A DNA stretch of 63,300 nucleotides, counting the filler, from Ministeria vibrans ATCC 50519 (taxonomy: Eukaryota; Protista; Filasterea): the NCBI GenBank assembly GCA_943704425.1. It is 9 parts of 9 records of this genome, joined end to end, with 100 filler letters (N's around TTAATTAATTAA, not from the genome) between each part and the next. Parts side by side here need not be neighbours in the genome. Positions count along the whole stretch, not along the records: positions 45,527 to 47,767 come from CALSCP010002621.1; 8 more parts are not named here. One strand, 5' to 3'. The notes beneath the pieces were generated by a model, which did not search any database, was not told the origin of the DNA, and saw only the letters and a program-made list of their open reading frames with translations. The translations under genes were made by a program, and so were the position numbers. Positions 45,140-47,767 of this stretch are shown here, one piece after another. Numbering within the stretch: the stretch's first letter is position 1; each line of letters begins with the position of its first letter.

Positions 45140-45532
45140 CTGCAACACCACAGAAGCAAGGACACCAAGGGAAGCCTGTCAAACATTCCCCTGCACTTGT
45201 GCCAGTCAATATCCTGATGTTGTGTACATACTAGCAGTCTTCATTCGATGAAAGCGAGAGGGCTTGTTTATTTTTGGCGCGAGCAAACAACGGCAGATGC
45301 CAAAAGCAAACACCAAATAGTTGTTCGATGAACTCTTCGACAAGAAGACTTAACAATGCACTTTGTTTAATCGCCTCTAAAAGCCCAGTTCACTAAAACA
45401 ACAATATAGAGAAGGGGGATAGGTAANNNNNNNNNNNNNNNNNNNNNNNNNNNNNNNNNNNNNNNNNNNNTTAATTAATTAANNNNNNNNNNNNNNNNNN
45501 NNNNNNNNNNNNNNNNNNNNNNNNNNAGTTTT

Positions 45533-47767
45533 GTGAATGTTGATGTGTCTTCAGACTTTCACATTTGTGGTGCAGTGCGACACTTTGTCCAGTCTGACTT
45601 GTACATTGCTGATGTTGAATGGTATGGAATGAGTCAAGATGACTGGAATCAAGCGTGCGAGATGGTGAAGAAGGTGGACACTGTGTTAAGTCCGAGTATT
45701 CTGGGGCTGCTACTCCATGTACCGACTTTGTGTCTCTGGATCAAGGCGGACGGTGGTGTGCATGTGCGCGATGCACAGCTTCAACACACCGTGTTAATGT
45801 GGGCGTCTTCTTTTGGCTCGATAGACTGTTTGCGGATTCTGTTCTCACAGGCTGCAGGTGCCAATGTGCTACAGCATGATGAAGTACGTGGGATCACTGC
45901 GTTGATGTGTGCAGCAGCCGGCGGTCATATTGATTGTGTGAAGTACCTGTTTACACAGCCAGGTGGCAATAAACCACGACAGGCCAATGATGGGCGGACT
46001 GCGTTGATGTATGCAGCAGCCAACGGGCATCTTGGCTGTGTGGAGTACCTGTTTACACAGCCAGGTGGCAATGAACCACGACAGGCCAATAATGGGCGGA
46101 CTGCGTTGATGTATGCAGCAGCCAACGGGCATCTTGGCTGTGTGGAGTACCTGTTTACACAGCCAGGTGGCAATGAACCACGACAGGACAAGGATGGGTG
46201 GACTGCGTTGATGCACGCAGCAGCCAACGGGCATCGTGATTGTGTGGAGTACCTGTTCGCACGTGAAGGTGGCAATGAACCACGACAGGATGAAGTGCGT
46301 GGGATGACTGCGTTGATGTATGCAGCAGCAAACGGTCATCTTGACTGTGTGAAGTACCTGTTTACACAGCCAGGTGGCAATGAGCCACGACAGGACAAGG
46401 ATGGTTTGACTGCGTTGATGTATGCAGCAGCAAAAGGGCATCGTGATTGTGTGGAGTACCTGTTCGCACGTGAAGGTGGCAATGAACCACGACAGGCCAA
46501 TGATGGGCGGACTGCGTTGATGTATGCAGCAGCAAAAGGTCATCTTGACTGTGTGGAGTACCTGTTTACACAGCCAGGTGGCAATGAACCACGACAGGAC
46601 AAGGATGGGCGGACTGCGTTGATGTTTGGAGCAGCAACAGGTCATCTTGACTGTGTGGAGTATCTGTTTACACAGCCAGGTGGCAATGAACCACGACAGG
46701 ACAAGGATGGGTGGACTGCGTTGCTGTATGCAGCAGCCAACGGGCATCGTGATTGTGTGGAGTACCTGTTCGCACGTGAAGGTGGCAATGAACCACGACA
46801 GGACAAGGATGGGATGACTGCGTTGATGTATGCAGCAGCAAAAGGTCATCTTGACTGTGTGGAGTATCTGTTTACACAGCCAGGTGGCAATGAACCACGA
46901 CAGGCCAAGGATGGGCGGACTGCGTTGATGTTTGGAGCAGCAAACGGGCATCGTGATTGTGTGGAGTACCTGTTCGCACGTGAAGGTGGCAATGAACCAC
47001 GACAGGATGAAGTGCGTGGGATGACTGCGTTGATGCATGCAGCAGCCAACGGGCATCGTGATTGTGTGGAGTACCTGTTCGCACGTGAAGGTGGCAATGA
47101 ACCACGACAGGACAAGGCTGGGATGACTGCATTGATGTATGCAGCAGCAAACGGTCATCTTGACTGTGTGAAGTACCTGTTTACACAGCCAGGTGGCAAT
47201 GAGCCACGACAGGACAAGGATGGGATGACTGCGTTGATGTATGCAGCAGCAAAAGGGCATCGTGATTGTGTGGAGTACCTGTTCGCACGTGAAGGTGGCA
47301 ATGAACCACGACAGGATGAAGTGCGTGGGATGACTGCGTTGATGTATGCAGCAGCAAAAGGTCATCTTGACTGTGTGGAGTACCTGTTTACACAGCCAGG
47401 TGGCAATGAACCACGACAGGACAAGGATGGGTGGACTGCGTTGCTGTATGCAGCAGCCAACGGGCATCGTGATTGTGTGGAGTACCTGTTCGCACGTGAA
47501 GGTGGCAATGAACCACGACAGGATNNNNNNNNNNNNNNNNNNNNNNNNNNNNNNNNNNNNNNNNNNNNNNNNNNNNNNNNNNNNNNNNNNNNNNNNNNNN
47601 NNNNNNNNNNNNNNNNNNNNNNCGACAGGACAAGGATGGGTGGACTGCGTTGCTGTATGCAGCAGCCAACGGGCATCGTGATTGTGTGGAGTACCTGTTC
47701 GCACGTGAAGGTGGCAATGAACCACGACAGGATGAAGTGCGTGGGATGACTGCGTTGATGTATGCAG
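45533..47767 (+). CDS. Ankyrin-repeat protein with near-identical 35/36-aa repeats (both ends in gaps)
   Basis: At least 16 copies of GxTALMxAAAxGHxDCVEYLF; 105/108-bp DNA period. Confidence 0.92.

What the first reader, a model, noticed from the sequence alone, without database searches (positions are those of the whole stretch)
45880..47767. Ankyrin array of near-identical repeats that appear combinatorially shuffled (candidate diversifying receptor)
Seen: at least 16 repeats nearly identical at DNA level, built from a few interchangeable modules. Hairpin variants are DKDG/ANDG/ANNG/AKDG/DKAG/DEVRG. The residue before TAL is R/W/M/L, helix-1 positions are Y/H/F and N/K/T, and two largely linked back halves occur (HL..FTQP versus HR..FARE). 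These modules appear in mosaic order. Known: hairpin and helix-1 positions form the ankyrin binding face, and fungal NLR WD40/ANK/TPR repeats with high internal conservation diversify by unequal crossing-over. Inference: a recognition protein whose specificity is reshuffled by repeat exchange, possibly non-self sensing in a protist.
Basis: partly seen in the sequence, partly recalled or inferred. Interest (0 to 1): 0.8.

Follow-up and report, generated by a model that had tools for sequence, protein, structure and literature searches.

The report
Recombining tandem ankyrin-repeat array, gene fragment
This 2.2-kb piece is a fragment of a gene for a long ankyrin-repeat protein whose 34-residue repeats are about 88% alike in DNA and have exchanged parts with one another, a known kind of repeat behaviour that cannot be tied to immune-type recognition from this fragment.

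Summary
From 45878 there is one divergent unit, then 15 very similar ankyrin units (34 aa, or 35 aa for the DEVRG type), up to 47521. One more full unit and a partial unit follow the gap. "Near-identical" is too strong: mean pairwise DNA identity is 88% (range 77.5-100%).

The mosaic is statistically real. 146 of 351 informative site pairs fail the four-gamete test, Rmin is 3 and the permutation p is below 0.0002. The back halves fall into two fully linked types that mostly alternate. Front halves are shuffled independently of them.

The five most variable residues are positions 2, 3, 5, 10 and 14, which lie on the usual ankyrin binding face. These are also the most variable positions in ankyrin repeats generally. 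pN/pS is 0.60 overall and about 1 at face positions, so positive selection is not shown.

The gap (98 N) breaks the frame only nominally. A 96-nt fill, or merging the 111-nt exact overlap of the two flanking contigs, restores it.

No relative above 49% identity was found anywhere. The 88 aa upstream of the array have no homologue, and no NACHT or effector domain is visible.

The repeats are of the TALM type, and their internal conservation (85.8% to consensus) sits at the 85% threshold of Dyrka et al. I file it as a new member of a known kind.

The parts
45527..45784 (+). Non-repeat coding region of 86 aa upstream of the array, cut by the piece's 5' edge
   Evidence: Open frame with no stop, while the other two frames carry stops. 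No Pfam family. phmmer of residues 1-88 against 1.84 billion representatives found 0 hits at E<=0.001. AF2 pLDDT is below 50 for residues 1-63.
45785..45877 (+). Degenerate ankyrin repeat that acts as the N-terminal lead-in of the array
   Evidence: Weak Ank and Ank_2 matches at residues 81-115 of the N-terminal query (E about 0.006-0.009, below the curated cut-off). AF2 predicts a helix pair there.
45878..45982 (+). Unit 1: a divergent 35-aa ankyrin unit (DEVRGI hairpin, type-A-like back half)
   Evidence: Unit table.
45983..47521 (+). Units 2-16: fifteen highly similar TALM-type ankyrin units of 102 nt (105 nt for the DEVRG units), with back-half types in the order AABABAABABBABAB
   Evidence: Pfam Ank_2 at E=2e-144. 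AF2 predicts one helix pair per unit, with helices at pLDDT about 90.
47522..47524 (+). First codon (GAT) of the next unit, last bases before the gap. GAT is used only by DEVRG-type units.
   Evidence: Codon table.
47525..47622 (.). Assembly gap of 98 N (length estimated). As written it shifts the frame by 2.
   Evidence: A 96-nt fill would complete one 35-codon unit in frame. Alternatively the flanking contigs overlap exactly by 111 nt.
47623..47730 (+). Last two codons (CGA CAG) of a unit, then unit 17, identical to units 9 and 16. Possibly unit 16 seen again.
   Evidence: The first 111 nt of this contig equal the last 111 nt of the left contig.
47731..47767 (+). Partial DEVRGM unit (12 codons plus 1 nt), cut by the piece's 3' edge

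Best explanation
The piece is a real fragment of a protein-coding gene, open at both ends. It encodes a long ankyrin solenoid of at least 17 repeats of the TALM subclass.

I infer that the array grew by tandem amplification of a few older unit types. There are two back-half types, A and B, mostly alternating, which suggests a two-unit building block. There are also several hairpin and helix-1 variants that differ at synonymous sites too. Unequal crossing-over or gene conversion with breakpoints inside units has since recombined front-half modules with either back half, and has homogenised the back halves within each type.

The protein most likely works as a protein-binding scaffold, like other long ankyrin arrays. 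The repeat-to-repeat differences on the hairpin and inner-helix face would give a non-uniform binding groove.

Shown: the array, the coding frame, the ankyrin identity, the mosaic, and where the variation lies. Inferred: the recombination mechanism, the binding role and any partner. Nothing on the piece shows that it is an immune or non-self receptor.
For: - Ankyrin identity: Pfam Ank_2 at 2e-144 and four more Ank families above cut-off. AF2 gives one helix pair per unit. PDB sequence matches are NOMPC, ankyrin-1/2 and DARPins at E down to 5e-56.
- Coding: about 740 codons without a stop in the plus frame.
- Mosaic: 146 of 351 site pairs are incompatible, arranged in three internally compatible blocks (nt 2-17, 31-45, 48-96). 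Rmin is 3 and PHI-type p<0.0002.
- Independence of front and back halves: front-half pS is the same within and between back-half types (0.17, 0.19, 0.18). Back-half pS is 0 within B, 0.09 within A and 0.27 between types.
- Near-alternation of A and B: 11 of 14 switches, p=0.05.
- Framework constraint: pN/pS is 0.47 outside the DARPin-randomised positions (2, 3, 5, 13, 14, 33) and about 1 at them. By minimum-event counts the non-syn:syn ratio is 14:1 at positions 2, 3, 5, 10, 14 against 10.5:9.5 elsewhere (Fisher p=0.009, with positions chosen post hoc).
- The same kind of array is seen elsewhere, including a contig whose name (ptg000772l) suggests a long-read assembly: P0009 has an invariant framework, variable hairpin and helix-1 positions and block duplications.
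Against: - Only one short scaffold is available, with no reads, no expression data, no second isolate and no known organism.
- Unit order and number may be partly wrong. Exact internal repeats of 140, 104 and 100 nt exist, and the contig stops 1 nt after the 140-nt one. Short-read assemblies of such arrays are documented to omit or create repeats (PMC12222747).
- The binding role rests on analogy with other ankyrin proteins.
- The array might be a decaying or non-expressed copy, although no stop or frameshift is seen.
Confidence: 0.6

Rival explanations
1. One reading: the array is the sensor domain of a non-self recognition protein (NLR-like or otherwise). Its specificity is diversified by repeat exchange and by positive selection on the binding face, as in fungal NLRs with highly internally conserved WD40, ANK or TPR repeats.
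For: - Internal conservation reaches the published threshold: 85.8% mean identity to consensus over 513 aa, against 85% over 100 aa in PMC4986451.
- Recombination between units.
- The five highest-entropy residues (5, 3, 2, 14, 10) fall on the hairpin and inner-helix face. Four of them lie in the set 2, 3, 5, 10, 13, 33 used in an ankyrin library design (hypergeometric p=0.0015; PMC4308713).
- Back halves are homogenised while front halves stay diverse.
- Among the nearest database arrays are several with similar internal conservation and TALM motifs: NACHT-ANK proteins, a HET-ANK protein, and a Mycena protein whose precomputed Pfam families I did not identify.
Against: - No NOD, HET or other effector domain is on the piece.
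- The 88 aa upstream have no homologue at all.
- pN/pS does not exceed 1 (0.60 overall, about 1 at face positions).
- The front-half variants also differ at synonymous sites (pS about 0.18), so they look like old diverged unit types recombined, not fresh adaptive substitutions.
- The variable positions are those that vary in ankyrin repeats in general.
- Six of the fourteen variable residues are in the outer helix or the loop after it.
- Similar arrays occur in bacteria and in Giardia cytoskeletal and kinase families with no known immune role.
Confidence: 0.15
2. The unit order, the unit number and part of the mosaic are an assembly artefact: reads from one or several near-identical arrays were threaded into a chimeric path.
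For: - The array contains 10 branching 62-mers and still 3 branching 100-mers, and exact repeats of 140, 104 and 100 nt.
- The left contig ends 1 nt after the 140-nt repeat.
- The contig after the gap is only 145 nt, and its first 111 nt duplicate the end of the left contig.
- The scaffold ends inside the array.
- SPAdes assemblies from 125-150-nt reads omitted or created repeats in comparable arrays (PMC12222747).
Against: - Informative sites within a unit are never more than about 24 invariant nt apart, and a whole unit is 102-105 nt. Any read of about 110 nt therefore phases a complete unit, so the within-unit mosaics (14 distinct units among 15) are hard to produce by mis-threading.
- The assembler broke the contig at the only repeat longer than 127 nt instead of guessing, which suggests the shorter repeats were spanned.
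- The frame is intact over 15 units.
- Arrays with the same mosaic style exist in at least one contig whose name suggests a long-read assembly.
Confidence: 0.2
3. A young, selectively unimportant expansion: a repeat array drifting under relaxed constraint, or a pseudogene copy, with no specific recognition function.
For: - Overall pN/pS of 0.60 with a wide interval reaching 1.4.
- No homologues of the unique part.
- The gene model is incomplete.
Against: - 21 of 35 alignment columns are invariant in amino acid over 15 units, although pS is 0.17.
- pN/pS is about 0.4-0.5 outside the face positions.
- No stop or frameshift in about 2.2 kb.
- The invariant residues are the framework residues of the ankyrin fold (T, A, L, A-A, G-H, C-V, Y-L-F).
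Confidence: 0.05

Closest known systems
Highly internally conserved (HIC) ANK/TPR/WD40 repeat domains of fungal NOD-like receptors (Paoletti, Saupe and co-workers; Dyrka et al. 2014, PMC4986451; Podospora het-d/het-e, PMC12222747)
   Same: - Tandem repeats of 33-42 aa with about 85% or more identity.
- Evidence of exchange between repeats.
- Variation concentrated on the hairpin and inner-helix face.
- Hard to assemble from short reads.
   Different: - No NACHT or NB-ARC domain and no effector domain is visible.
- Positive selection is not shown.
- Repeat-number polymorphism could not be tested.
- Conservation is only at the threshold (85.8% to consensus, 80% pairwise).
- There are two alternating back-half types.
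- The organism is unknown.
TALM-ankyrin (TA) repeats of Giardia Nek kinases and Protein 21.1 (Manning et al. 2011, PMC3218828)
   Same: - An exact TALM motif opens helix 1 in 14 of 17 units.
- GH.DCV and an E-G-G loop in place of the usual G-A-D-V-N loop.
- Long arrays.
- The best named database hits are Giardia Nek and 21.1 proteins. The top local identity is 49% over 93 aa, to a G. muris protein.
   Different: - Giardia TA repeats are described as divergent in sequence within a protein, and in the Giardia Nek protein I read they are about 31 aa long. Here the units are 34-35 aa and highly similar.
- No kinase, RING or coiled-coil part is seen.
- Identity is only 35-49%, so this is a shared repeat style and not orthology.
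Long ankyrin solenoids with solved structures: ankyrin-R/B membrane-binding domain (4rlv, 7tw3) and the NOMPC ankyrin spring (5vkq)
   Same: The best PDB sequence matches (E=5e-56 and 9e-56). An array of 17 or more stacked repeats is expected to form a superhelical groove that binds partners along the inner helices and hairpins.
   Different: Their repeats are diverged from one another and conserved between species. Here the repeats are recent copies of each other.
Designed ankyrin repeat libraries (DARPins; ANK-N5C, PMC4308713)
   Same: An identical framework in every repeat, with differences confined mostly to positions 2, 3, 5, 10 and 13/14.
   Different: This is a natural sequence. It has extra variation in the outer helix and loop (positions 17, 18, 21, 25-27), a 34-aa unit and an occasional one-residue hairpin insertion.

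Membership tests
Ankyrin repeat proteins (Pfam Ank clan) | Sequence matches to the ankyrin repeat profiles above the curated cut-offs | tested here: met
   Ank_2 470.9 bits (cut-off 27.3), Ank 362, Ank_4 351, Ank_5 308, Ank_3 292.
Ankyrin repeat proteins (Pfam Ank clan) | Each repeat forms a helix-turn-helix pair followed by a loop or hairpin, and the pairs stack into a solenoid | tested here: met
   The AF2 single-sequence model has two helices per 34-aa unit with pLDDT about 90 in the helices (mean 72.5, pTM 0.66). The loops have low confidence. Coordinates were not inspected.
TALM-ankyrin subclass (Manning et al. 2011) | TALM motif at the start of the repeat | tested here: met
   14 of 17 complete units read TALM and 3 read TALL.
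TALM-ankyrin subclass (Manning et al. 2011) | Conserved E at the end of the repeat | tested here: inconclusive
   E at position 27 occurs only in type-B units. An invariant E sits in the loop (position 31). I did not see the published logo, so the equivalence is uncertain.
TALM-ankyrin subclass (Manning et al. 2011) | Attachment to a Nek kinase domain or Protein 21.1 architecture (RING, coiled coil) | not testable with these tools
   The piece ends 86 aa upstream of the repeats and inside the array downstream.
Highly internally conserved (HIC) repeats, as defined by Dyrka et al. 2014 | At least 85% identity between repeats over at least 100 aa | tested here: met
   Mean identity to the consensus is 85.8% over 15 units (513 aa). 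This is borderline: pairwise mean 80%, range 66-100%.
Fungal-type NLR with an HIC sensor domain | A NACHT or NB-ARC NTPase domain N-terminal to the repeats in the same protein | not testable with these tools
   Only 86 non-repeat residues are present. They have no Pfam match and no homologue in 1.84 billion proteins.
Fungal-type NLR with an HIC sensor domain | Positive diversifying selection at binding-face codons | tested here: inconclusive
   pN/pS is 0.97 at the DARPin-randomised positions against 0.47 elsewhere. The minimum-event non-syn:syn ratio of 14:1 at positions 2, 3, 5, 10, 14 is about the neutral expectation. There are too few synonymous sites, and recombination invalidates tree-based tests.
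Fungal-type NLR with an HIC sensor domain | Repeat-number and repeat-content polymorphism between isolates | not testable with these tools
   Only a single assembly piece is available. No identical or near-identical sequence turned up in any collection searched.

The most novel reading that the evidence does not exclude
In an eukaryotic lineage absent from current protein databases, a TALM-type ankyrin array with high internal conservation serves as the variable sensor of a non-self or pathogen recognition protein. New specificities would arise by exchange of hairpin and helix-1 modules between repeats, on a framework held constant by gene conversion. This would be an ankyrin counterpart, outside the fungi studied so far, of the Podospora HNWD system.
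Probability: 0.12. Interest if true: 0.6.

Novelty: new member of a known kind. Interest (0 to 1): 0.3.

Why it matters
If the array is correctly assembled, it is a clean small example of how a repeat protein keeps an invariant scaffold while reshuffling its surface residues by exchange inside the gene. It also extends TALM-type, highly conserved ankyrin arrays to a lineage with no close relatives in the databases.

The phenomenon itself is already described for fungal NLRs, and comparable arrays turned up here in bacterial and metagenomic sequence. By itself the fragment neither opens nor settles a question.

The practical lesson is a caution. Such arrays on short scaffolds need long reads before repeat order, repeat number or selection are interpreted.

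Tried and rejected
- Exact DNA pattern scans with conserved repeat motifs found nothing. I used a 23-nt motif in viral contigs and a 22-nt motif in metagenome and genome contigs.
- Word-based protein searches with the whole 666 aa and with a four-unit 137-aa piece found only generic ankyrin proteins at 49% identity or less.
- Protein-guided locus searches in metagenome, prokaryotic genome and viral contigs reached at most 41% identity, and no match began before query residue 34, inside the non-repeat part.
- An exhaustive phmmer search of the 88-aa upstream region gave 0 hits. A lenient Pfam scan of the N-terminal 117 aa gave only a weak ankyrin signal.
- The ESM Atlas returned only generic ankyrin clusters, with a low recognition score.
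- Looking up the contigs of the most similar or most repetitive hits did not reveal the source organism. P0071 lies next to a ComEC-like gene and so is bacterial. P0009 lies on a 3.7-Mb contig of unknown taxon. P0044 is a NACHT-ANK protein on a metagenome contig.
- Rejected: the 618-aa ORF on the minus strand. It is a by-product of a stop-free repeat, and all family matches are on the plus strand.
- Rejected: free combinatorial order of units. The back-half types nearly alternate.
- Not attempted: tree-based codon selection tests, which recombination between units invalidates with only 15 short sequences; complex prediction, since no partner is known; a fold search, since the ankyrin identity was never in doubt.
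Full report
WHAT IS THERE. The piece 45527-47767 is a 2241-nt scaffold with 98 N inside it. One plus-strand frame is open from the first base to the gap, 666 codons with no stop. The other two plus frames are full of stops in the unique part.

Splitting the translation after each PRQ gives the following:
- 86 non-repeat residues (45527-45784);
- a degenerate ankyrin repeat (45785-45877);
- a divergent unit with a DEVRGI hairpin (45878-45982);
- fifteen highly similar units (45983-47521), each 34 aa, or 35 aa in the three units whose hairpin reads DEVRG instead of the four-residue D/A-K/N-D/N/A-G.

TRF reports a period of 102 nt, 15.9 copies, 86% matches and a score of 2237. Pfam gives Ank_2 at E=2e-144 and four further ankyrin families far above their cut-offs. 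A single-sequence AlphaFold model shows one helix pair per unit, with pLDDT about 90 in the helices and low confidence in the loops and in residues 1-63. The best solved-structure matches by sequence are the NOMPC ankyrin spring, the 24-repeat ankyrin-1/2 domain and DARPins. The 618-aa minus-strand ORF is a by-product of a stop-free repeat.

THE GAP. As written, the 98 N shift the frame by two, and the ankyrin frame continues in another frame after the gap. The gap length is only an estimate, and two in-frame solutions exist.
- The left contig ends with GAT, the first codon of a unit. GAT is used only by DEVRG-type units. The right contig starts with CGA CAG, the last two codons of a unit. A fill of 96 nt would complete one 35-codon unit exactly, very close to the estimate of 98.
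- Alternatively, the last 111 nt of the left contig are identical to the first 111 nt of the 145-nt right contig. Merging them also keeps the frame and makes the post-gap unit the same as unit 16.

Either way the frame break is not a real feature of the gene. The count is 16 units before the gap, one of them divergent, plus at least a partial further unit. The array runs off the 3' edge.

HOW ALIKE, AND WHERE THE UNITS DIFFER. Mean pairwise nucleotide identity among the 15 units is 0.88 (0.775-1.0). Amino-acid identity is 0.80 pairwise and 0.858 to the consensus. 'Nearly identical' is therefore too strong, although units 9 and 16 are identical.

Twenty-one of 35 alignment columns are invariant in amino acid. 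The invariant columns are the framework (T-A-L, A-A, G-H, C-V, Y-L-F) and the whole loop G-G-N-E-P-R-Q.

There are also M/L at position 9, A/G at 11, D/G at 18 and E/K at 21.

The back halves fall into two types:
- type A: L at 17 and T-Q-P at 25-27;
- type B: R at 17 and A-R-E at 25-27.

The two types are perfectly linked, including a synonymous TTT/TTC marker. All seven pre-gap type-B back halves are identical in DNA.

THE MOSAIC IS REAL IN THE SEQUENCE AS GIVEN. Of 351 pairs among 27 informative nucleotide sites, 146 fail the (generalised) four-gamete test. The failures lie between three blocks that are almost fully compatible internally: the hairpin (nt 2-17), helix 1 (nt 31-45) and the back half (nt 48-96). 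The minimum number of recombination events is 3, and a PHI-type permutation test gives p<0.0002.

Synonymous divergence in the front half is the same within type A (0.17), within type B (0.19) and between types (0.18). In the back half it is 0.09, 0 and 0.27 respectively. Front-half modules have therefore been distributed over both back-half types, while the back halves stayed homogeneous within type.

Because the front-half variants also differ at synonymous sites, they look like older diverged unit types that were recombined, not fresh substitutions.

The order of units is not random. The types run AABABAABABBABAB, with 11 of 14 switches (permutation p=0.05). This points to a two-unit building block.

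SELECTION. Pairwise Nei-Gojobori values are pS=0.173 and pN=0.103, so pN/pS=0.60, with a column-bootstrap 95% interval of 0.28-1.40.

The five positions with the highest amino-acid entropy are 5, 3, 2, 14 and 10. An independent ankyrin library design picked positions 2, 3, 5, 10 and 13 (plus 33). It chose them as the naturally most variable positions that form the binding surface on the beta-turn and helix 1 (PMC4308713). Four of our top five fall in that set (hypergeometric p=0.0015). From my own recollection, position 14 is one of the randomised DARPin positions (Binz et al. 2003).

By minimum-event counting, those five codons carry 14 non-synonymous and 1 synonymous change, against 10.5 and 9.5 in the rest (Fisher p=0.009). 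Two cautions apply. The positions were chosen post hoc. And 14:1 is close to the neutral site ratio for these codons, about 10:1. At the DARPin-randomised positions (2, 3, 5, 13, 14, 33) pN/pS is 0.97, against 0.47 elsewhere.

In short, the framework is under purifying selection and the face positions are free to vary. Diversifying selection is neither shown nor excluded. The same positions vary most in ankyrin repeats in general, so the pattern does not mark a special receptor. Six of the fourteen variable residues (17, 18, 21, 25-27) lie in the outer helix and the loop after it, away from the canonical binding face.

CAN THE ASSEMBLY BE TRUSTED? There are no reads to check.

Within a unit, informative sites are never more than about 24 invariant nucleotides apart, and a unit is 102-105 nt. 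Reads of about 110 nt would therefore phase whole units, and the within-unit mosaics (14 distinct units among 15) are unlikely to be threading errors.

Unit order and number are less safe. The array has 10 branching 62-mers, 3 branching 100-mers and exact repeats of 140, 104 and 100 nt. The left contig stops one base after the 140-nt repeat. This suggests an assembler that spanned the shorter repeats and gave up at the longest.

A study of Podospora NLR genes found that SPAdes assemblies from 125-150-nt reads omit or create repeats in comparable arrays (PMC12222747). I give about 0.2 to a materially wrong order or number.

RELATIVES AND ORIGIN. Nothing close exists in any collection searched.
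- The best protein matches are 35-49% identical and are generic ankyrin arrays.
- Metagenome, prokaryotic genome and viral loci reach at most 41%.
- Exact DNA motifs are absent.
- The 88 upstream residues have no homologue among 1.84 billion representative proteins and no Pfam family.

The organism is therefore unknown, and 'protist' remains a guess.

The repeat style is informative, though. Fourteen of 17 units carry the exact TALM motif, together with GH.DCV and an E-G-G-type loop. Manning et al. (PMC3218828) defined TALM-ankyrin repeats as a subclass typical of Giardia Nek kinases and Protein 21.1. They found TALM in 59% of Giardia ankyrin repeats, 2.6% of human ones and 0.5% of Trichomonas ones, and found many TALM repeats also in the mushroom Coprinopsis.

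The best named hits here are Giardia Nek and 21.1 proteins. TALM repeats with high internal conservation also occur among the other hits:
- a Mycena protein;
- several metagenomic NACHT-ANK proteins with a 34-aa period;
- a bacterial protein encoded next to a ComEC-like gene;
- a protein on a 3.7-Mb contig whose name suggests a long-read assembly. Its array shows the same picture: constant framework, variable hairpin and helix-1 residues, duplicated blocks.

About 5% of the 240 ankyrin hits are as internally conserved as this array. That sample is biased by the word search.

COMPARISON WITH WHAT IS KNOWN. The array works like the highly internally conserved repeat domains described for fungal NLRs (PMC4986451). 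It shows concerted evolution plus exchange between repeats, with differences on the binding face, and it just meets their numerical criterion. It cannot be filed as an NLR, for three reasons:
- the NOD domain cannot be tested;
- positive selection is inconclusive;
- polymorphism between isolates cannot be tested.

It shares the TALM style with the Giardia families. It differs from them in unit length (34-35 aa against about 31 in the one Giardia Nek protein I read) and in the high similarity of its units, and no kinase or RING part is visible. Structurally it should resemble the long solenoids of ankyrin-R/B and NOMPC.

VERDICT. Repeat exchange and face-centred variation are real. The receptor or immune role, the protist origin and adaptive diversification are not supported by any test that could be run.

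The most likely account (0.6) is a genuine gene fragment for a long TALM-type ankyrin scaffold. [quoted passage not shown] It is a new member of a known kind and of modest interest. Long reads and the missing flanks would decide the rest.

Noticed in passing
window 47414-47524 and 47623-47733: The 111 nt before the gap and the first 111 nt after it are identical. The 145-nt contig after the gap may simply overlap the left contig, or exactly one 35-codon unit (96 nt) may be missing. Both solutions keep the frame.
   Followed up: yes
window 45983-47521: The two back-half types nearly alternate (AABABAABABBABAB). All seven type-B back halves are identical in DNA, while type-A back halves differ slightly. 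This hints at a two-unit ancestral block and at type-specific homogenisation.
   Followed up: partly
window 45527-45790: The 88 residues upstream of the repeats are a complete orphan: 0 phmmer hits in 1.84 billion representatives, no Pfam family and low AF2 confidence. They lie in an open frame, while the other two frames carry stops.
   Followed up: yes
window 45869-47725, minus strand: A 618-aa ORF runs antisense through the whole array, and several 50-116-aa ORFs occur in other frames. These are by-products of a repeat unit that lacks stops in those frames. No family evidence supports them.
   Followed up: partly
L171:1001-3946 (protein P0009, residues about 493-957): An unrelated 33-aa TALM-type ankyrin array lies on a 3.7-Mb contig whose name suggests a long-read assembly. 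It has an invariant framework, variable hairpin and helix-1 residues, and a five-unit block duplicated in tandem, the same style as the window's array.
   Followed up: partly
L172:1132-4263 (protein P0044); also P0013, P0014, P0069, P0085, P0089: These are metagenomic NACHT-ANK proteins whose ankyrin arrays have a 34-aa period, TALM motifs and 63-79% repeat-to-repeat identity. The source organism is unknown. They show that TALM-type conserved arrays do occur on NOD proteins.
   Followed up: partly
L170:1001-4036 (protein P0071): A 1011-aa TALM-rich ankyrin protein with 74% repeat-to-repeat identity is encoded directly upstream of a ComEC-like gene on a 1.35-Mb contig. It is therefore bacterial.
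   Followed up: no
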